DNA of 64,000 nucleotides, taken from Vitrella brassicaformis CCMP3155. Lineage: Eukaryota; Protista; Chromerida. The DNA lies in assembly GCA_001179505.1 (NCBI GenBank), contig CDMY01000369.1, positions 1 to 64,000 on the forward strand, given 5' to 3'. The notes beneath the pieces are model-generated. The model saw nothing but the letters and a program-made list of their open reading frames with translations. It searched no databases and was not told where the DNA came from. The stretch's first letter is position 1, and every line of letters starts with the position of its first letter. A program made the translations under genes and the position numbers. Of the stretch, positions 40,123 to 49,610 are shown piece by piece.

Positions 40123-40555
40123 GAGAGCACTTCAGACGGTGAGATCTGCCGAGTGGAGAGCTTCTTTCGACCCGCTTTCAGCCTTCGAGTGCAGCTTGAG
40201 CGAGGCGGATGCCGAGAAGCCTGAGGCGAGAGGTATATATACGTCTGAGTGCGAAATCACGGGACTGATGGCGGAACAGATGCCGACGAGCGGGAGGGAT
40301 CTGAGGCCAAGACACAAGACACCGGGACAGAGAGTGACGACAGAGAGAAGAGAACGGTGGAAGGAGAGAAGAGAGATCTATCGGTGTGCGGATGTGCTCT
40401 CATTCGTTCGATGTGCTCTTTCTTGTGCGGGAGAGTTATGAGCAAACCTGCACGACCGTCGATTTGTTCAGCAGCAGCGGTTTCAGGGAGCACCCTAGGC
40501 GGCTTGACGGCCAAGTCCCCTGTCTGAAAACACGCACCCTAACATGCAACTCGGA

Positions 40556-40772
40556 TGTTGAGGAAATGATACGCCCGCAGCTCGCAAGAGCTAAGAGAAA
40601 GGCGTACCCTAGCCCAGACGAATTAAAAGTGCCGCGTACACCCGAGGGTTTGGAGCTAGGAACCCTATACGATCGCCTCACACACACCTGGCGTCTTCGG
40701 ACGTGTTTGTGCTGTTTGTCAAGCCTGGCTCTTAACTCTTGACCCGCTGAAGCTAGTCACGTTTCTTCAACA
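40556..40772 (+). repeat. LTR 1 (217 bp)
   Basis: TGTTGAGGAAATG...GTTTCTTCAACA, identical by eye to LTR 2. Confidence 0.95.
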
Positions 40773-41258
40773 GGTTATAGAGCCCACTGAGCACCTCCCA
40801 AGGGGAGAAGGCTTGTCGAGCACCAGAACACAGATCTCTGTGTGTGTGCTGTGGTTCGACTCAGCATGAGTCTGAGTGGTGAGGTCACGCCTCGTCAAGA
40901 GGGTGATCACGACCCACACCAACACACTGAGGTGGACGCCACAGTCGGTGATGTCGAGATGGGTGGCGTGAAGGCTGCTGTGGCAGATCTCTGCCTCGAG
41001 GAGGAGGGAGGTGGTGCTTCCGGTGGTCACAATGGCCAAGAGGAAGGTCAACAGCCCTCGCCTCTCGAGCAGCTATGCGCCTTCGCTCTCAAGTGGGAGA
41101 GTCTGACATCATGCGACGCATCTGGTGTGGAACGCTGTGTCTCATCTGGTGGCGGCATCTCTATGGTCGGTCGCGGCCGTGGCAAGGCTCTTACCATGCC
41201 CGCTTGGGTGACCAGGATGCGACCCCATCAGCAGATGAATGAGACTGAGGCGGAAAGC

Positions 41259-41558
41259 NNNNNNNNNNNNNNNNNNNNNNNNNNNNNNNNNNNNNNNNNN
41301 NNNNNNNNNNNNNNNNNNNNNNNNNNNNNNNNNNNNNNNNNNNNNNNNNNNNNNNNNNNNNNNNNNNNNNNNNNNNNNNNNNNNNNNNNNNNNNNNNNNN
41401 NNNNNNNNNNNNNNNNNNNNNNNNNNNNNNNNNNNNNNNNNNNNNNNNNNNNNNNNNNNNNNNNNNNNNNNNNNNNNNNNNNNNNNNNNNNNNNNNNNNN
41501 NNNNNNNNNNNNNNNNNNNNNNNNNNNNNNNNNNNNNNNNNNNNNNNNNNNNNNNNNN
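41259..41558. other. Assembly gap (300 N)
   Basis: Run of n. Confidence 1.
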
Positions 41559-41947
41559 AGAGCCACAAGAAGCGGAAGCTGGACTAGGGAAGGAAGAGAC
41601 CCACAGGTCTTCGTGTGTGCTCACCTGAGTAGTTGGGTGAAGCAACGCGCACTCTCCCTTCCGAAAGGTGCTGTGATTTGGTGGGTTGGCACAGCAGCCG
41701 TCCTTCTTTCGCGCACACGGCCCTGACTCTTGAGCACGAAGAGGCCGACGCTGTGCATGATCCCCGCTGCGCACCAGCAGAGATGTGCAACTCGGAATGT
41801 ATAGCAGTGCTGCCCGCAGACAGCAGAATCTCAACTGCAGACAGCAGGGCCCGGTGGGTCAACGCTTCTGGAAAGCTGGAGATCTGCAGTGAGTGTTCGT
41901 GCTCTCTCTTACGTGATAGTGAGGGGTGGGCTGCGTGCGAAGAGGGG

Positions 41948-42164
41948 TGTTGAGGAAATGATACGCCCGCAGCTCGCAAGAGCTAAGAGAAAGGCGTACC
42001 CTAGCCCAGACGAATTAAAAGTGCCGCGTACACCCGAGGGTTTGGAGCTAGGAACCCTATACGATCGCCTCACACACACCTGGCGTCTTCGGACGTGTTT
42101 GTGCTGTTTGTCAAGCCTGGCTCTTAACTCTTGACCCGCTGAAGCTAGTCACGTTTCTTCAACA
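41948..42164 (+). repeat. LTR 2 (217 bp, shared central LTR)
   Basis: Same sequence as LTR 1, preceded by a PPT and followed by a PBS. Confidence 0.95.
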
Positions 42165-42257
42165 GGTTATAGAGCCCACTGAGCACCTCCCAAGGGGAGA
42201 AGGCTTGTCGAGCACCAGAACACAGATCTCTGTGTGTGTGCTGTGGTTCGACTCAGC

Positions 42258-43262
42258 ATGAGTCTGAGTGGTGAGGTCACGCCTCGTCAAGAGGGTGATC
42301 ACGACCCACACCAACACACTGAGGTGGACGCCACAGTCGGTGATGTCGAGATGGGTGGCGTGAAGGCTGCTGTGGCAGATCTCTGCCTCGAGGAGGAGGG
42401 AGGTGGTGCTTCCGGTGGTCACAATGGCCAAGAGGAAGGTCAACAGCCCTCGCCTCTCGAGCAGCTATGCGCCTTCGCTCTCAAGTGGGAGAGTCTGACA
42501 TCATGCGACGCATCTGGTGTGGAACGCTGTGTCTCATCTGGTGGCGGCATCTCTATGGTCGGTCGCGGCCGTGGCAAGGCTCTTACCATGCCCGCTTGGG
42601 TGACCAGGATGCGACCCCATCAGCAGATGAATGAGACTGAGGCGGAAAGCATGTTGATCGGGTGTGATGCGACACGTCGAGGACTTGTTGGTTTGCAGCA
42701 AACCATGCTCGAAGTGCGTCGACCTGCCCAGCACACACCGATCGTGGCTATGCTCGAACGACCGAAGGTCGAGGAAGTCCCCAAATGGGATGGCGAGGCC
42801 GCAAGCTATGCGGTATGGCGCTGCAGCTTCATGGTTATGATGACTCGCGTCAATCTCAGCCATCTCATCGACAAGGGTATGCGAGCTGCGTTGCGAATGG
42901 TCAGCAACGAGCAGTACGAGGCTGATGCCAGCTACATCTATGAGCTGCTGCTGCGTGCTGTACATCCCTCAGCCCCTGAAGCCTTGCGCATCATACGCGC
43001 CGCTGGGATCAGCGATGCCTATGACGTGCCGGCTATGTGGGCCTTGACGGGTGTTAAGAGCGGTCTCGAAGCACGTGACGTCGTTGCGGCTCTGGAAGCA
43101 CTGGACGCGGTGTACATGCCTGGTGGGCGTGGCCGTAAGTGCTGGCTCTGCGGGCGTTCGGGCCATCTCCAACGAGACTGCCCACGCAGAGAGCCGGGCA
43201 AGGTAGCGAAGAGAAACCCCAAAATGGTACGCACGATGGTGCACAGGGGTGGGAGCAAGTGA
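42258..43262 (+). CDS. gag: Copia-type Gag-like protein (334 aa) with zinc knuckle
   Basis: Intronless ORF containing PKWDGEAASYAVWRCSFMVMM (copia Gag N-terminal-like) and CWLCGRSGHLQRDC (CX2CX4HX4C). The 5' part is repeated at 40866-41258. Confidence 0.85.
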   Translation: MSLSGEVTPRQEGDHDPHQHTEVDATVGDVEMGGVKAAVADLCLEEEGGGASGGHNGQEEGQQPSPLEQLCAFALKWESLTSCDASGVERCVSSGGGISMVGRGRGKALTMPAWVTRMRPHQQMNETEAESMLIGCDATRRGLVGLQQTMLEVRRPAQHTPIVAMLERPKVEEVPKWDGEAASYAVWRCSFMVMMTRVNLSHLIDKGMRAALRMVSNEQYEADASYIYELLLRAVHPSAPEALRIIRAAGISDAYDVPAMWALTGVKSGLEARDVVAALEALDAVYMPGGRGRKCWLCGRSGHLQRDCPRREPGKVAKRNPKMVRTMVHRGGSK

Positions 43263-43326
43263 GTGCTATTTGTCGACTGTGAGTCAGTCACGGACAGACG
43301 GACAGTCAGCGAAGTGCAGAGGAAGC

Positions 43327-43626
43327 NNNNNNNNNNNNNNNNNNNNNNNNNNNNNNNNNNNNNNNNNNNNNNNNNNNNNNNNNNNNNNNNNNNNNNNNNN
43401 NNNNNNNNNNNNNNNNNNNNNNNNNNNNNNNNNNNNNNNNNNNNNNNNNNNNNNNNNNNNNNNNNNNNNNNNNNNNNNNNNNNNNNNNNNNNNNNNNNNN
43501 NNNNNNNNNNNNNNNNNNNNNNNNNNNNNNNNNNNNNNNNNNNNNNNNNNNNNNNNNNNNNNNNNNNNNNNNNNNNNNNNNNNNNNNNNNNNNNNNNNNN
43601 NNNNNNNNNNNNNNNNNNNNNNNNNN
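43327..43626. other. Assembly gap (300 N)
   Basis: Run of n. Confidence 1.
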
Positions 43627-44026
43627 CTCTGTCAGCGAGAGCCACAAGAAGCGGAAGCTGGACTAGGGAAGGAAGAGACCCACAGGTCTTCGTGTGTGCT
43701 CACCTGAGTAGTTGGGTGAAGCAACGCGCACTCTCCCTTCCGAAAGGTGCTGTGATTTGGTGGGTTGGCACAGCAGCCGTCCTTCTTTCGCGCACACGGC
43801 CCTGACTCTTGAGCACGAAGAGGCCGACGCTGTGCATGATCCCCGCTGCGCACCAGCAGAGATGTGCAACTCGGAATGTATAGCAGTGCTGCCCGCAGAC
43901 AGCAGAATCTCAACTGCAGACAGCAGGGCCCGGTGGGTCAACGCTTCTGGAAAGCTGGAGATCTGCAGTGAGTGTTCGTGCTCTCTCTTACGTGATAGTG
44001 AGGGGTGGGCTGCGTGCGAAGAGGGG

Positions 44027-44241
44027 TGTTGAGGAAATGATACGCCCGCAGCTCGCAAGAGCTAAGAGAAAGGCGTACCCTAGCCCAGACGAATTAAAAG
44101 TGCCGCGTACACCCGAGGGTTTGGAGCTAGGAACCCTATACGATCGCCTCACACACCTGGCGTCTTCGGACGTGTTTGTGCTGTTTGTCAAGCCTGGCTC
44201 TTAACTCTTGACCCGCTGAAGCTAGTCACGTTTCTTCAACA
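44027..44241 (+). repeat. LTR 3 (215 bp)
   Basis: Same as LTR 1 and LTR 2 except for one fewer CA unit; followed by the TSD TCGGA. Confidence 0.95.
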
Positions 44242-44565
44242 TCGGACACGCAACAGCAGCACGCAGAGGGCAGACACAGCATACAGGTGGATATGCAATG
44301 CGCTGCGAACGGCGGCAACATACGAGCAGGCACACAACATCGCACACGCGCCACCCCAGCAACCTGAAGGCGGCGTGCGTGTGTGCGTGGTGCACCATGA
44401 CTCCATACGTACAGCGCCCATTCCCAGGTGGCCAGCCAGTGCAGATCGACCAGTTACACACAAACACGCCCGTATAACAACCATCCCTCGAAAAACCCTT
44501 TCTGATTGCGAGCTTTTTTGCGAGCTCGAGGACCAAAGGAGGAGAGAGTAGACAAGCCTCACAAA

Positions 44566-46949
44566 ATGAAGTTCGGCAAGCGTATTCGCGAGGCCGCCCG
44601 CAAGTCGTCGGGCCATTACTACATCGACTACAAATCACTCAAAAGACTCGTCAAGCGCATCAGGACAGCAGTCGAGTCAGAGCTGCTGACTCAGACGTGC
44701 GAAGCGCCGAGTGATCCGTCAGCCGCTATGCACCCGGAGGGAGGACACACGCTCAACGAAGCGTTCGAACAACAACTCGAGCTCGAGATTCAGAAGGTGA
44801 CGAGGCAACACGCCAGTGATTCCTTTGATCACCCTCTTGTGCGTATGTTCAGGTGGAAGACGACTTCAGGAGGGCGCTGTCGGCTCTGCAGGCCCGCTAT
44901 GACCGGCTGAAGGCCCGGCTGGACCAGCTGCACGCCGACAGCAACTGTCTTCCCCCGCACAACCACACCGGCAGCAGCAGCAGCAGCGACACAACAGCGC
45001 CGCCGCAGGCACAGCTGTCAACCGAGGTCGTTGGCGACTTCGATCAGTTCCTCAGCCTCCTCACGACCTCTGGCTACCCCCAGTGGTGTCTCGATCTTTT
45101 TGGCGAGATACGTGACTTGTCGCGGGCTTTCGACCAGCTCAGGAAAGCCGTCGTGTGGAACAGCATCGCGGTTGCCAAGATCCTCAAGAAGCGGCGCAAG
45201 AACACCCCCTACGGCCACACGCGGCAGGCTTCCTACTACCTCTTGACGCGCGAGTTCTACACCGGTCCGCAGCTGGCGGCCCTTGTGACGGGGCTAGACT
45301 GCATGGTAGAGGAGGTGATGCTGCTGGTGACCGGGAGACCAATCAACCGAGACAGCTATGAGTGCCCCATCTGCTATGAGACGCTCAAATCGCCTGTGGT
45401 TCTGCCATGTACGCACACAGAGAGGAGGGAACAGGGGATGGGATGACTGAAGTCGCGCATTCCCTGGTGTGTGTGTGTGTGTGTGTGTCAGGTTCGCACC
45501 GATTCTGCCTGCGGTGTCTGGCCAAGGCGGCGGAGAGCTTCGAGGCCTGCCCGCTGTGTCGGCGGTACATCGAGCCTGAGCTGGTGACCGTGGATGAGGG
45601 GCTCGAGCGGTTCGTCAAGAGGCACTTCCTCGCGCACACACACATACAGCTGCCACCGCCACGTACGCGACAGACAATCTGCAGAACACACACACTAGGA
45701 AACCATCACACACGCGGGCACACGCTTCTCTTATCTGTTTCTCTCACCAGGTGCAGTACGCCAATCTGCCGCCACTCGAGCATTCGAGTCGATATCGTGG
45801 GTGCCGTCCTTCATCGTCATGGCGGTGGTGCGCGTTTTGTCCTTCATCATGGCTAGACTCCTCATCGCGCCGCTCACCGCACTCATCGCCATGCGCCCAT
45901 GGCACCACCAGCAGCGACCAGCCGATATCGACCCAGCCAAGCAGGACAGAGGCGACGCCGAGACCGAGATCGGCCCTCCCGTGCGTCTGGCCGCCCACCG
46001 GCCCTCCCCTCTGACCCTGCCAAAGGCTGCGGTTGCCGATGGCGGCAATGAGCGTTTGGTGCGCGAGTGGCGCGTGGCCGAGAGCCCCTCACCCCCTCGC
46101 TACGCCCACCGCCACGACAACCGGACCGGCCAACGAGTGTCCTGGAAGAGCGACGAGAACGAGCCCACCACGCCGCCCAGCTCCCATTCCCCGCCCATCC
46201 TCATCCACCGATGCACCAGTGGGCGTGAGGGTGGCGAGCCAACCTCGGCGAGGAGCGCCGATCCCCATGAGGGCGTGAGCAGCCCCAGCGAGAAGCTGCG
46301 GTGGTTTGTGAGCCGCCAGGGTCTCGAGAAGAGGGGGCTGCGGCGGTACCACACCAATCCTGAGTCGGCCAAGGTGCGTGTGCCGGAGGGTTTGGCGGCA
46401 TCGGATGGGGGGGTGTCACCCAAGTATGTGTCGAGCGCTACGCCGCTGATGGAGGATAGCGCACAGGTACGTAGCTGCGACACACAGCACAGCACACGGA
46501 CCACTGGTTAGTACTCATGGGTGGACACTCTTGTCTCTCTCTGTGCTGTGTGACGTGTGTGTGCAGCCATGGAGCCCCAGCACCCCGACAGAGCAGTCGC
46601 CTCGCCGGATGGTTCACCGGTCCGCCTGCCACCTCCTGCCTCCCACCCACCCCTCCGTCCACTCAGAAACGGACACCTACCACTCCTGTCTGTCGGCATC
46701 CCCGTCCATCCACTCCAACCATTCTCACCACCACCATCAGCCGGCCATCATATCCTGTGTCAGCAGCGTCGCGTCGATGGACGGCGAGTGGCCGGAGGGG
46801 CTTCCGTGGCCGCCGGTGGAGGGCTGCGTCACGAGCGATCAGCAGTACGCCATCATCAAAAGGCTCAACTACATTCTCAGACATGGCGCGCCACACCTGG
46901 TGAGAGAGCGAACGCATGCTCCCGCCGACATCTATCGGCATCATATGGG

Positions 46950-46981
<32 letters not shown>

Positions 46982-48056
46982 CAGGGATTGCCGATGCGCG
47001 AGGACGGGTACGTCCGTGTGTGTGAGCTGTTGGCTCTCGAGGAGATGCAGGGCGTCACCACGGAGATCATGCAGGAGGTGGTGAAGACCTGTCACAAGCG
47101 GCGGTACGAGGTGCGGGAGGACGCCCACGAAGGCCCGCTCATCCGCGCCACCCAGGGGCACACCATCCGGCAGCTGCGGACCGACAGGGCACTGCAGAAG
47201 ATCATCTCACCGGAGGAAATACCCGTCTGTGTGCACGGTGAGTGGAGTGAGTGAGCAAAGGGCGGCATACCAGGACATGCACGCACAGCAGAGCACAATG
47301 GGGTTGTGTGTGATCGCTTCGGTTGGTTCTCTGCTTCAGGCACGTACATGCGGAATTGGCTGGGTATCCGACTTCTGGGGCTGCACCGCATGAGCCGCAA
47401 TCACATCCATTTCGCCCCCGGGTTGCTTGACGCCCGCGAGGTAATAAGCGGCATGCGTCGGTCGAGCGAGGTGGCCATCTACATCAACACACACCAGGCC
47501 ATGCACGACGGCATCACCTTCTTCCGGTCATCCAACAACGTCATTCTCACCGAGGGGCTGCAGGGCGCACTGCCGCCCAGATACTTCTCCACAGTCCGAC
47601 AGCTGCAGGTACGCTGGCTGCAAACAACTAACTAAAGGAGTTGGGAGCGGGAGAGGGAGAGAGACCTCTGTGTGCTGTGCTGTCTGTGGTCTCTGTGTGT
47701 GTGTAGTGGGATGTGGACCTGTGGAGGGACGGCGTGGACCTGACTGAGCAGTACCTCGATCGCTTGTCGGGTGATGGTGGTGGGGTGCAGCCCCATGACG
47801 GCGGCCACGGCCACGGCCTGCCTGCCTCGCTGCCACCGGCCGAGGAGGTGTTTGTGAGCCAGCTCAAGCAGGAGGTGGAGTCGGTGCACTCCAGCCCTTT
47901 CAACCCGGGATTCATCGCGGTCAGTCAGTCAGTGCAGAAAGGACCGATTGATTACGTGTGTTTGTTGTGTCTTTGTTTGTTGGTGTGCGCCATCAGGTTG
48001 TGAACAGTTCGTTGGCAAAGGAGGTGGACGAGCTGGTGCCGCTGGACGATGACTGA
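44566..48056 (+). CDS. SPX - C3HC4 RING - Tpt1/KptA (tRNA 2'-phosphotransferase) fusion protein, ~933 aa, 9 exons
   Basis: Exons 44566-44796, 44853-45408, 45492-45662, 45751-46466, 46567-46899, 46985-47237, 47340-47608, 47707-47919 and 47997-48056 are all GT-AG and phase-compatible. SPX: MKFGK, YIDYKSLKR, AVAKILKK. RING: CPICYETLKSPVVLPCSHRFCLRC...CPLCR. Tpt1: ILRHG, KRRY, IRATQGH, HGT, RMSRNHIHF, SGMR, SSNNVILTEG. Confidence 0.88.
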
Positions 48057-49610
48057 TTGCATTGCGTGGCAGACAGGACAGACAGACAGACAGACAGATG
48101 GACCGCGACCGGGCGAGGGCCCACTCGTTTCAGTCCACTGCACTGTGTACGTGTAGACAGGCAAGACAGACAGACAGACAGACAGGTTGGTTAGTTGGTT
48201 GACGGGCTATTTGGGCCGTCCTGTGGTCACTTGGTTCTTGCTAGCTGCTGATACTTACACCTACCGTCCGCACGTTCTCCAATCGCGCTCACGTCGCCAT
48301 CCAAGTGCTGCGTCGTCGCCATCTCGCGTCGCTGCGGTGCTTGGATGCGGGTGTTACCGCTCTTGGAGGTGTGCGTGGTGCTTGGACAGCAGAGGCTGGT
48401 TGTCGTGTCTGTCGATCGGTGGCTGTCTGTCTGTTTTCCGTAGTAGGTGCTGTGGCTGGCTATTTTTGTCGTGAAACACTCATGCCATCCTTGGATGATG
48501 TGTATGTGTATATGTATGTGTATTGCTGGCCGACAGGCTGGCTGGCTGGCTGACTACCCATTTGCTCAAAACGCTACTCGCTCTCTCCTTCCCTGCCTCC
48601 CTGCCTCCCTGCCTGCAGAAATACCTGACAGGTATCTAACGAAGGCGCGATAGTCAACAGACATGGACGCTTTTGCCTTTCTCGCTATAGGGATGTTCCC
48701 TCTGGGGTGGTTTTCTGACTCGCCGACAGACGCACAGACAGAGAGACAGACAGACAGACAGACAGGCACTGTTTGAACCAACCATTTGAGTGTACGATCG
48801 CGACCGGATGGATGGATGGGTGGGTGGGTGGGTGACACGCATTAATGAGGGTATTTTTCTTGCCTTCTCTTCTTGTTGTTGTTTGTGTGGCCGTCGAGCT
48901 GCGACGCCTGTTGGCTGTATTGTATAGAAACAAGCAATCGGATCGAATCTGTTTTGCCCATATGTACGTATATACCTACTTGCTCATGCTTTACACACAT
49001 GTACACCCATTATATATTATCCTATCGGTTTTGCTCTGTCTACCTGTCTGTCCGTCTCTCTCTCTCAACACTAACACTGACTGCATGGCGAGAGCCGAGC
49101 GAGTAGTGAGTGATTGAGCGACCATGTCACGTTGTCAATTCATCCTACCATCCTCTCCTCCCACCGCACCCTTCAGTGCATCCATGAGTGTACTATAGGC
49201 CACCAACCATCCATCCATCCAGACAGACAGACAGACAGACCCGACAGAGAGAGAAAGGAGACATACTACACACAAGTACTTGCTTGCTGACCTGCAGCCT
49301 TACTGTCATCCATCCCATCATGTGTGTCGGTTTTGTTTATGGTGCGTGCACTTGGCTGACGAAGGATTGGTCCCATGTTTCCTAACGTGACATGACAGTG
49401 TGGCGTTCGGGCAGGAGTTCCGTTAAACCTCGGCTCGAGGAGTCAGAGAGGAGCGCAGGTTCCTCCGCAACGAAGCAGCTTGAAGGGCCGGTTGCACTCG
49501 ACATCAGCCACCGACGCATCGTCACTCAGTGGATCGTCACTGCTGCGCCAGTGCTTCGTCACTCTCCCAGAATCCGAGCGGATCTGTCACATGCATCAAT
49601 CTTTCCGAGA

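What the first reader, a model, noticed from the sequence alone, without database searches (positions are those of the whole stretch)
44566..48056. SPX-RING-Tpt1 fusion: a phosphate sensor and E3 ligase fused to an RNA 2'-phosphotransferase
Seen: joining nine exons at canonical GT-AG sites gives one stop-free frame of 2802 nt (~933 aa); intron phases are 0,1,1,0,0,1,0,0. It runs from an N-terminal SPX domain (MKFGK, YIDYKSLK, KILKK) through a complete C3HC4 RING into a Tpt1/KptA domain that keeps the Arg-His-Arg-Arg catalytic tetrad (ILRHG, KRRY, IRATQGH) and the HGT, HIHF and SGMR motifs. Established: SPX domains bind inositol pyrophosphates as phosphate-status sensors. SPX-RING proteins (plant NLA/BAH1) ubiquitinate phosphate transporters. 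Tpt1 uses NAD+ to remove the 2'-phosphate at tRNA splice junctions and can ADP-ribosylate nucleic-acid termini. Inference: one polypeptide could couple phosphate/InsP8 status to tRNA or RNA end-healing, to RNA ADP-ribosylation, or to its own ubiquitin-controlled turnover. I know of no described SPX-RING-Tpt1 architecture, but could not search for one.
Basis: partly seen in the sequence, partly recalled or inferred. Interest (0 to 1): 0.92.

Follow-up and report, generated by a model that had tools for sequence, protein, structure and literature searches.

The report
SPX-RING ligase fused to Tpt1
The alga Vitrella brassicaformis has an expressed nine-exon gene that joins a phosphate-sensing ubiquitin ligase (SPX-RING) to the RNA 2'-phosphotransferase Tpt1 in one 933-residue protein; I found this combination in no other organism, and nothing yet shows that the two halves work together.

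Summary
Nine exons with GT..AG borders give a 2802-nt open frame. Its 933-aa product is identical to the public Vitrella brassicaformis CCMP3155 protein CEM06704.1 / A0A0G4F3X2, which is annotated only as "2'-phosphotransferase".

Two RNA-derived assemblies from different studies each hold one contig (3531 and 3649 nt) covering the whole gene, with intron-free joins where pieces are listed.

All three modules look intact:
- SPX: the inositol-phosphate-binding residues Y22, K26, K186, K189, K190 and K193 are conserved, and the fold matches solved SPX domains.
- RING: a complete C3HC4 finger.
- Tpt1: Pfam E 5e-55, tetrad R663/H664/R723/R773, HGT motif, and TM 0.89 to mouse TRPT1.

The 320-aa linker is open in one frame only, has coding-type GC3, and holds a strongly hydrophobic helix found in no relative.

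The Tpt1 part is the orthologue of the long Tpt1 proteins of Colpodella and coccidia, which lack SPX-RING. Stand-alone SPX-RING proteins occur in Symbiodinium and fungi. So this looks like a Vitrella-lineage fusion of two formerly separate genes.

Functional coupling is untested. In fission yeast, the two domains of the Tpt1-Yae1 fusion need not be linked. The scan noted this same stretch once before.

Verdict: a real new domain combination, of moderate interest.

The parts
44425..44565 (+). 5' UTR as far as the RNA contig reaches; it contains no upstream ATG
   Evidence: The X7 contig starts at 44425. No ATG lies in 44425-44565.
44566..48056 (+). Coding region of the nine-exon gene, ATG to stop: 933 aa, identical to CEM06704.1 / A0A0G4F3X2_VITBC
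   Evidence: Exon model; identical to P0001; spliced RNA contigs in X6 and X7.
44566..45332 (+). SPX domain, aa 1-237 (exon 1 and most of exon 2, with intron 1 at 44797-44852). Binding residues Y22 and K26 lie at 44629-44643; K186, K189, K190 and K193 lie at 45177-45200.
   Evidence: Alignments A1 and A3 show these residues invariant. The family profile hits solved SPX domains at E 6e-21. The AF2 model has pLDDT about 90 and Foldseek TMt 0.64-0.77 to SPX structures. The binding clusters are defined in PMC9911596.
45354..45574 (+). C3HC4 RING finger, aa 245-290, split by intron 2 (45409-45491): C248 C251 C263 H265 C268 C271 C282 C285
   Evidence: Pfam zf-C3HC4_3 E 1e-9; the eight ligands are invariant in A1 and near-invariant in the larger A3; Foldseek hits to TRAF6 and RNF168 RINGs.
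45753..46812 (+). Low-complexity linker rich in Ser, Pro, Ala, Arg and His, aa 321-640 (exon 4 and part of exon 5, with intron 4 at 46467-46566)
   Evidence: No stops in frame against 4 and 6 in the other two frames. GC3 is 0.787, like the domains; intron GC is 0.47-0.57. No Pfam hit. The part modelled (aa 321-400) has low pLDDT.
45798..45893 (+). Hydrophobic helix, aa 336-367, possibly a membrane anchor; found only in the Vitrella protein
   Evidence: Kyte-Doolittle 19-aa peak of 2.36. AF2 predicts a helix at 340-366. Absent from the 22 homologues scanned.
46840..47557 (+). Tpt1/KptA RNA 2'-phosphotransferase domain, aa 650-826 (exons 5-7, with introns 5 and 6). R663/H664 lie within 46873-46887, R723 within 47141-47161, HGT 753-755 within 47231-47344 (spliced) and R773 within 47393-47413.
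   Evidence: Pfam PF01885 E 5.2e-55 with full profile coverage. Aligns to human, mouse and yeast Tpt1. Conserved columns in A4. AF2 pLDDT above 93 and Foldseek TMt 0.89/0.86 to mouse/human TRPT1.
47558..48053 (+). C-terminal extension, aa 827-933. The motif WDVDLWRDGVDLTEQYLDRL (47707-47769) is shared only with apicomplexan and colpodellid Tpt1s. The tail is acidic.
   Evidence: A4 alignment; BLASTP against Colpodella and Toxoplasma; AF2 pLDDT about 95 up to aa 859.
48057..48760 (+). 3' UTR, about 700 nt, containing (CAGA)n repeats
   Evidence: The X7 contig is 3649 nt and X6/X7 pieces reach about 48724-48760.

Best explanation
Shown: this is a genuine, transcribed nine-exon gene of Vitrella brassicaformis. 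Its single open frame encodes, in order:
- an NLA/Pqr1-type SPX-RING ubiquitin-ligase module (aa 1-290);
- a 320-aa low-complexity linker with one strongly hydrophobic helix;
- the apicomplexan-type Tpt1 RNA 2'-phosphotransferase with its clade-specific C-terminal extension (aa 650-933).
Every residue that defines ligand binding or catalysis in the three modules is present.

Inferred origin: two formerly separate genes were joined in the Vitrella lineage. A stand-alone SPX-RING, as still found in Symbiodinium and fungi, was joined to the long-N-terminus Tpt1 shared with Colpodella and coccidia.

Inferred mechanism: the SPX helices bind inositol (pyro)phosphates through Y22/K26/K190 and K186/K189/K193 and so gate the RING's E3 activity, as in NLA and Pqr1. 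The Tpt1 domain uses NAD+ to remove RNA 2'-phosphates or to ADP-ribosylate 5'-phosphate ends. Most likely the two activities run side by side on one polypeptide, sharing expression and location, without allosteric coupling. The only built-in link would be that RING-driven (auto)ubiquitination sets the half-life of the attached Tpt1.

My odds: about 0.9 for one gene and one mRNA; about 0.85 that all modules are competent; about 0.5 that they act independently rather than as a coupled device.
For: - Gene and mRNA: the exon model has 2802 nt, GT..AG throughout and phases as stated. It is identical to public protein P0001.
- RNA support: two RNA-derived assemblies from different samples and studies each give one contig spanning 44543 or 44425 to about 48760 with the introns removed. 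X1 and X2 add joints at introns 3, 6, 7 and 8 and a loose end that matches exon 5 across intron 4. The DNA runs X3, X4 and X5 show only the unspliced form.
- Start of translation: the first ATG of the mRNA opens the canonical SPX start MKFGK.
- Linker: open in one frame only, with coding-type GC3.
- SPX-RING: stand-alone homologues, invariant binding residues, profile hits to solved SPX domains and a matching fold.
- Tpt1.
- Orthology and lineage restriction: a 99% SH-aLRT clade with Colpodella, Alphamonas and coccidia. Those proteins have no SPX or RING and show no similarity outside Tpt1.
- Independence of fused Tpt1 partners: S. pombe Tpt1-Yae1 (PMC12810181).
Against: - Assembled contigs cannot prove that single RNA molecules run from SPX to Tpt1. 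An internal start or polyA site in the linker would be merged by the assembler.
- There is no protein-level evidence.
- The Pfam SPX score of the protein on its own is below the gathering threshold.
- A single-pass membrane helix between RING and Tpt1 would put the two halves on opposite sides of a membrane, which fits neither module. The helix is unexplained.
- The fusion is seen in only one species, so it may be recent and selectively neutral.
- Absence of a second Vitrella Tpt1, or of any Chromera Tpt1, rests on word-seeded searches, not on a genome-wide scan.
Confidence: 0.6

Rival explanations
1. A coupled device. PP-InsP binding to the SPX domain switches the RING, and the RING's auto- or trans-ubiquitination controls the amount, location or activity of the attached Tpt1. 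RNA 2'-phosphate removal or ADP-ribosylation would then follow cellular phosphate status.
For: - All InsP-binding, RING and Tpt1 catalytic residues are intact on one reading frame.
- No second Tpt1 or SPX-RING from Vitrella was seen in the searches. The fused gene may therefore be the only copy of both.
- The linker is kept open and codon-biased.
Against: - The fusion is absent from every orthologue found.
- No known biochemical link joins PP-InsP signalling to Tpt1 (no paper found).
- The S. pombe Tpt1 fusion partner is functionally unlinked.
- The linker is long and, where modelled, low-confidence, which argues against allosteric contact.
Confidence: 0.25
2. Two products from one locus. An internal promoter or polyA site, or proteolysis within the linker, yields a separate SPX-RING protein and a separate Tpt1 of about 300 aa (for example from the in-frame Met just upstream of the domain). 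The full-length protein would then be minor or absent.
For: - Logan contigs merge overlapping transcripts and give no local depth.
- In the low-depth run X2 the laid contigs cover mainly the Tpt1 half.
- All relatives keep these functions in separate proteins.
Against: - The 320-codon linker is open in one frame only (P about 1e-3 from its composition) and has the same GC3 as the domains.
- No contig end, loose end or alternative joint marks an internal boundary in the two deep RNA assemblies.
- Tpt1 orthologues in the clade are themselves long proteins with the domain at the C-terminus.
Confidence: 0.1
3. Cooperative chemistry. The Tpt1 domain acts mainly as an ADP-ribosyltransferase on nucleic-acid 5'-phosphates and the adjacent RING brings in ubiquitin, by analogy with PARP9-DTX3L and ubiquitylation of ADP-ribose. 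The analogy comes from my own knowledge.
For: - The domain is closest in sequence and fold to animal TRPT1, an enzyme known to ADP-ribosylate nucleic-acid ends (title of the TRPT1 structure paper cited; PMC6582358 is listed).
- RING and an ADP-ribosyltransferase fold lie on one chain.
Against: - The RING belongs to the SPX-RING family, whose studied members target phosphate transporters.
- There is no Deltex C-terminal domain, which is what carries out ADP-ribose ubiquitylation (my knowledge). Pfam finds nothing else in the protein.
Confidence: 0.05

Closest known systems
SPX-RING E3 ligases: Arabidopsis NLA/BAH1 and S. pombe Pqr1
   Same: An N-terminal SPX domain starting at Met1 (MKFGK), with the Tyr/Lys and K-x-x-K-K-x-x-K binding clusters, followed by one C3HC4 RING about 50 residues later. 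Stand-alone homologues of 279-528 aa align over about 90% of aa 1-320.
   Different: NLA and Pqr1 end shortly after the RING. This protein continues for a further 640 residues (hydrophobic helix, linker, Tpt1). GFP-Pqr1 is cytoplasmic. Identity to homologues is only 25-39%. The targets are unknown.
Apicomplexan and colpodellid long Tpt1 (Toxoplasma gondii, Neospora caninum, Eimeria stiedai, Colpodella angusta)
   Same: Tpt1 domain at the C-terminus of a long, low-complexity protein. Identity over the domain is 46-59%. They share the IKKLN(F/Y)ILRHGA and KRRYE motifs and the C-terminal extension W-D/N-V-x-L-x-x-DG-x-D-x-T. They form a 99% supported clade.
   Different: None has SPX or RING. Colpodella has a partial kinase domain instead. 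Coccidia have a 100-170-aa insert inside the domain that Vitrella lacks.
Animal TRPT1 (PDB 7yw2, 7yw3) and yeast Tpt1 (7yw4)
   Same: Same fold (TMt 0.89/0.86, rmsd 1.8-2.5 Å, 42% identity). Same Arg-His-Arg-Arg tetrad and HGT motif.
   Different: Those are single-domain proteins of 230-253 aa without the C-terminal extension.
S. pombe Tpt1-Yae1 fusion (PMC12810181)
   Same: A eukaryotic Tpt1 fused to an unrelated functional domain within one narrow lineage.
   Different: The partner domain and the domain order differ (there Tpt1 is N-terminal). In fission yeast both halves were shown to work when unlinked. Nothing has been tested in Vitrella.

Membership tests
SPX domain (PF03105) | Pfam model score at or above the gathering score | tested here: not met
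   22.7 bits against a cut-off of 27.8, covering only profile positions 1-96. Many true SPX-RING homologues also match mainly at the N-terminus.
SPX domain (PF03105) | Homology to bona fide SPX proteins by profile search | tested here: met
   A profile of this protein plus 11 homologues hits OsSPX1, CtVtc4, XPR1 and Gde1 SPX structures at E 6e-21 to 1e-15 over profile positions 1-200.
SPX domain (PF03105) | Inositol-phosphate binding clusters (ScVtc4 Y22, K26, K133 and K129, K132, K136; PMC9911596) | tested here: met
   Y22, K26, K186, K189, K190 and K193 have the same spacing and are invariant or nearly invariant in A1 and A3.
SPX domain (PF03105) | Helical-bundle SPX fold | tested here: met
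   AF2 pLDDT about 90 over the helices. Foldseek TMt 0.64-0.77 to isolated SPX domains 8tyv, 5ijp and 5ijj.
SPX domain (PF03105) | Binds InsP6 or PP-InsP | not testable with these tools
   Needs ITC or a pull-down with recombinant aa 1-240.
SPX-RING E3 ligases (NLA/Pqr1 type) | SPX immediately followed by a complete C3HC4 RING | tested here: met
   C248 C251 C263 H265 C268 C271 C282 C285. Several Pfam RING models score above their cut-offs.
SPX-RING E3 ligases (NLA/Pqr1 type) | Ubiquitin-ligase activity towards phosphate transporters | not testable with these tools
   Known for NLA and Pqr1 (PMC8294586). Nothing is known for Vitrella.
Tpt1/KptA (PF01885) | Pfam model score above the gathering score over the full length | tested here: met
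   186.7 bits against 26, profile positions 2-177 of 177.
Tpt1/KptA (PF01885) | [quoted passage not shown] | tested here: met
   R663, H664, R723 and R773 (R773 aligns with yeast R138), plus H753-G754-T755. The tetrad and the HGT motif are as defined in PMC12810181.
Tpt1/KptA (PF01885) | Two-lobe Tpt1 fold | tested here: met
   pLDDT above 93. TMt 0.89 to mouse TRPT1 and 0.80-0.84 to bacterial and archaeal Tpt1/KptA.
Tpt1/KptA (PF01885) | NAD+-dependent RNA 2'-phosphotransferase activity | not testable with these tools
   Needs yeast tpt1-delta complementation or an in-vitro assay.
Apicomplexan/colpodellid long-Tpt1 clade | Groups with these proteins in a tree and shares their C-terminal extension | tested here: met
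   99% SH-aLRT clade of 8 rows. The motif W-D/N-V-x-L-x-x-DG-x-D-x-T occurs only in the clade.

The most novel reading that the evidence does not exclude
Vitrella has placed what may be its only Tpt1 under direct inositol-pyrophosphate control. In this reading a membrane-tethered, SPX-gated RING ligase tunes the level or activity of the attached RNA 2'-phosphotransferase/ADP-ribosyltransferase. That would be the first physical link between phosphate-status signalling and tRNA splicing or RNA-end modification.
Probability: 0.15. Interest if true: 0.75.

Novelty: new variant of a known kind. Interest (0 to 1): 0.45.

Why it matters
SPX domains are the general eukaryotic receptors for inositol pyrophosphates. 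Their known partners are transporters, polyphosphate synthase, transcription-factor inhibitors and RING ligases. An RNA-repair or ADP-ribosylation enzyme on the same chain would add a new output class if the coupling is real. It would also give a natural construct for testing whether Tpt1 activity can be regulated.

If the modules prove independent, the gene is still a clean, RNA-supported example of lineage-specific gene fusion in a chromerid. It also shows that Tpt1 in the apicomplexan lineage repeatedly sits at the end of long proteins with changing N-termini. The current public annotation ("2'-phosphotransferase") hides two thirds of the protein.

Tried and rejected
- A full-length alignment for structure prediction (A2) misplaced the SPX-RING homologues across the whole protein. 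I dropped it and modelled the N- and C-terminal parts separately, so no full-length model or inter-domain contacts were obtained.
- Single-sequence phmmer of aa 1-240 against PDB was too weak (E 0.57). The profile search was needed.
- The ESM Atlas feature search returned only RING and SPX-RING clusters at scores below 0.75, and nothing with Tpt1.
- Literature searches for SPX with Tpt1 or KptA, SPX with Vitrella, and Tpt1 with Toxoplasma found nothing relevant. The TSA prefix of the Colpodella transcript was not found in any paper.
- I looked for a remnant of SPX-RING in the N-termini of the Toxoplasma and Colpodella proteins by BLASTP. There is none.
- I tested whether the hydrophobic helix was inherited from a tail-anchored SPX-RING ancestor. 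None of the scanned SPX-RING homologues has one.
- I looked for a second Vitrella Tpt1 and for a Chromera Tpt1 among candidates of 173-1633 aa. None was seen, but these searches are word-seeded, so this is weak negative evidence.
- I could not test for internal transcript ends: only assembled contigs are available for this organism, not raw reads.
Full report
**Observation**

The exons are 44566-44796, 44853-45408, 45492-45662, 45751-46466, 46567-46899, 46985-47237, 47340-47608, 47707-47919 and 47997-48056. They join into 2802 nt with no internal stop. Every intron is GT..AG and the phases are 0,1,1,0,0,1,0,0.

A search with the exon-7 peptide against 1.8 billion representative proteins returned a 933-aa protein (P0001) at 100% identity. 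It is letter-for-letter my translation. It is CEM06704.1 / UniProt A0A0G4F3X2 of Vitrella brassicaformis CCMP3155, named only "unnamed protein product" or "2'-phosphotransferase". So the window is Vitrella, not Chromera, and the gene model is already public.

**Is it one transcript?**

- Eight public runs hold the stretch.
- Run X6 (2013) has one 3531-nt contig, depth 28.6. It is laid as pieces 44543-44794, 44851-45414, 45498-45662, 45751-46463, 46564-46900, 46988-47236, 47339-47606 and 47705-47918. Its record coordinates are contiguous across the joins (two letters unlaid at the repeat in intron 5). An intron-8 joint (47918 to 47996) is also listed for X6.
- Run X7 (2015, a different study and sample) has a 3649-nt contig, depth about 150, starting at 44425. 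Its listed pieces show the same joins through 47606, plus a 3'-UTR piece at 48203-48491. The intron 7 and 8 joints are listed at the same depth.
- The small shifts at introns 2 and 5 are aligner tie-breaks inside (GT)n tracts. The contig lengths add up to the predicted junctions.
- Runs X1 and X2 add independent joints at introns 3, 6, 7 and 8, and a loose end at 46466 that reads straight into exon 5.
- Runs X3, X4, X5 and X8 carry only the unspliced genomic form.
- The 5' UTR (44425-44565) has no ATG, so the first start codon of the mRNA opens MKFGK, the canonical SPX N-terminus.
- Caveat: these are assemblies, not single molecules.

**Is the middle translated?**

The 320 codons between RING and Tpt1 have no stop in frame, against 4 and 6 in the other two frames. 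From the linker's base composition, P(no stop) is about 1e-3. GC3 is 0.787, the same as in the three domains (0.78-0.84), whereas the introns are 47-57% GC. This is the signature of translated sequence, not of a UTR or a spacer.

**The N-terminal module**

- Pfam on the whole protein gives RING at 245-290 (E 1e-9), but SPX only at 22.7 bits, below the 27.8 cut-off.
- A search with aa 1-320 found 16 proteins. Nearly all carry SPX plus RING, and most are 279-551 aa long. They include Symbiodinium sp. CCMP2456 "TRY3" and fungal RING-14/Pqr1-like proteins.
- In the alignments, M1, K2, F3, Y22, K26, N180, K186, K189, K190 and K193 are invariant or nearly so. So are the eight RING ligands C248 C251 C263 H265 C268 C271 C282 C285.
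- The yeast Vtc4 residues that bind InsP6 are Y22, K26, K133 and K129, K132, K136 (PMC9911596). The Vitrella residues have the same K-x-x-K-K-x-x-K spacing.
- The family profile hits solved SPX domains at E 6e-21 to 1e-15.
- An AlphaFold2 model has pLDDT about 90 over the SPX helices and about 80 over the RING. Foldseek returns SPX domains (TMt 0.64-0.77) and RINGs.

This half is therefore a full NLA/Pqr1-type SPX-RING ligase. In Arabidopsis and fission yeast, such ligases restrict phosphate uptake by ubiquitinating phosphate transporters (PMC8294586).

**The C-terminal module**

- Pfam PTS_2-RNA covers aa 650-826 at E 5.2e-55 and spans the full profile.
- The exon-6 and exon-7 peptides align best to human and mouse TRPT1 and to yeast Tpt1.
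- Yeast R138 aligns with the Arg of SRNHIHF. The tetrad is therefore R663, H664 (ILRHG), R723 (IRATQGH) and R773.
- The HGT motif is at 753-755.
- The model has pLDDT above 93 from aa 649 to 859. It superposes on mouse TRPT1 with TMt 0.89 and rmsd 1.8 Å.

**Relatives and origin**

- The nearest Tpt1 sequences are Colpodella angusta (1390 aa, 52% identity over 252 aa), Alphamonas edax (a fragment), and Toxoplasma, Neospora, an unnamed coccidian-like protein (P0011) and Eimeria (1154-1693 aa).
- With Vitrella they form a clade with 99% SH-aLRT support.
- They share a C-terminal extension, W-D/N-V-x-L-x-x-DG-x-D-x-T-x-x-F/Y-x-D-R-L, that other Tpt1s lack.
- In all of them Tpt1 sits at the end of a long, low-complexity protein, but none has SPX or RING. 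Colpodella has a partial kinase domain, and BLASTP shows no similarity outside Tpt1.
- Among 2474 Tpt1 hits (the best 150 listed by length, and the long C-terminal ones I scanned with Pfam), among 18 long proteins and among 101 proteins of ordinary length, Tpt1 is found next to RNase_T, mitochondrial carrier, SRR1, kinase and many plant gene-model merges. It is never found next to SPX.
- No second Vitrella Tpt1, no Chromera Tpt1 and no separate Vitrella SPX-RING appeared. The word-seeded searches make this weak evidence.

The simplest history is that a stand-alone SPX-RING gene and the long Tpt1 gene were joined in the Vitrella lineage.

**The unexplained helix**

Residues 336-367 give a Kyte-Doolittle peak of 2.36. 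AlphaFold2 models them as a helix, at low confidence. None of the 22 homologues scanned has anything similar. As a single-pass anchor the helix would separate two modules that both need cytosolic or nuclear substrates. An in-plane or hairpin anchor is possible. I leave this open.

**Mechanism and its limits**

What is shown is an intact sensor, an intact RING and an intact Tpt1 on one reading frame, carried by one spliced mRNA contig. What is inferred is how they work together.

I favour side-by-side action with shared expression and location. Any coupling would then be limited to RING-dependent turnover of the whole chain. My reasons are:
- the fusion is confined to one lineage;
- the linker is long and, where modelled (aa 321-400), low-confidence;
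- the one studied eukaryotic Tpt1 fusion, S. pombe Tpt1-Yae1, works equally well when the halves are separated (PMC12810181).

Separate products from internal starts, internal ends or cleavage remain possible (about 0.1).

**Novelty and score**

No paper in the searched library mentions the combination, and a 2025 survey of dinoflagellate SPX classes lists nothing like it. The sequence itself is public and machine-annotated. This is a new combination of three well-known domains in one organism, with solid transcript support and no functional data. I score interest at 0.45.

The scan had noted this same stretch once before (s1-239421). An unchecked note of an RtcB gene in this genome (s1-227001) bears on whether Tpt1 is needed for tRNA splicing here, but I did not test it.

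Noticed in passing
window 40553-44241: An LTR-like element lies upstream. A unit of about 230-300 nt occurs three times (40553, 41945, 44024) and a 300-nt pair sits at 41559/43638. The element ends about 180 nt before the mRNA 5' end at 44425, and read depth stays repeat-like up to about 44520.
   Followed up: partly
window 45798-45893 (aa 336-367): A strongly hydrophobic helix lies in the linker and is absent from all SPX-RING and Tpt1 relatives scanned. Its topology and role are unexplained.
   Followed up: partly
P0151 (Colpodella angusta transcript GDKJ01004141): The orthologous Tpt1 is preceded by a partial protein-kinase domain (aa 44-173) and about 850 aa of low-complexity sequence. This may be another lineage-specific fusion or a chimeric transcript.
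   Followed up: no
P0020, P0083, P0224, P0226, P0263, P0274: A Tpt1 + RNase_T exonuclease architecture recurs in six predicted proteins. The two that carry names are brown algae (Discosporangium, Ascophyllum). It looks like a conserved fusion rather than a gene-model error.
   Followed up: no
P0009-P0012 (Toxoplasma, Neospora, P0011, Eimeria), alignment A4 columns 190-370: Coccidian Tpt1 proteins carry a 100-170-aa low-complexity insert inside the catalytic domain, between the KRRYE and RATQGH motifs. Vitrella and Colpodella lack it.
   Followed up: no
P0168 (Symbiodinium sp. CCMP2456 'TRY3'): This is a stand-alone SPX-RING protein in a dinoflagellate, yet a 2025 survey of dinoflagellate SPX proteins (PMC12388464) lists no SPX-RING class.
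   Followed up: partly
window 45460-45497, 46941-46987, 47690-47706, 48067-48202: (GT)n tracts lie directly before the acceptor AG of introns 2, 5 and 7, and (CAGA)n repeats lie in the 3' UTR. They break the short-read contigs at these points.
   Followed up: no
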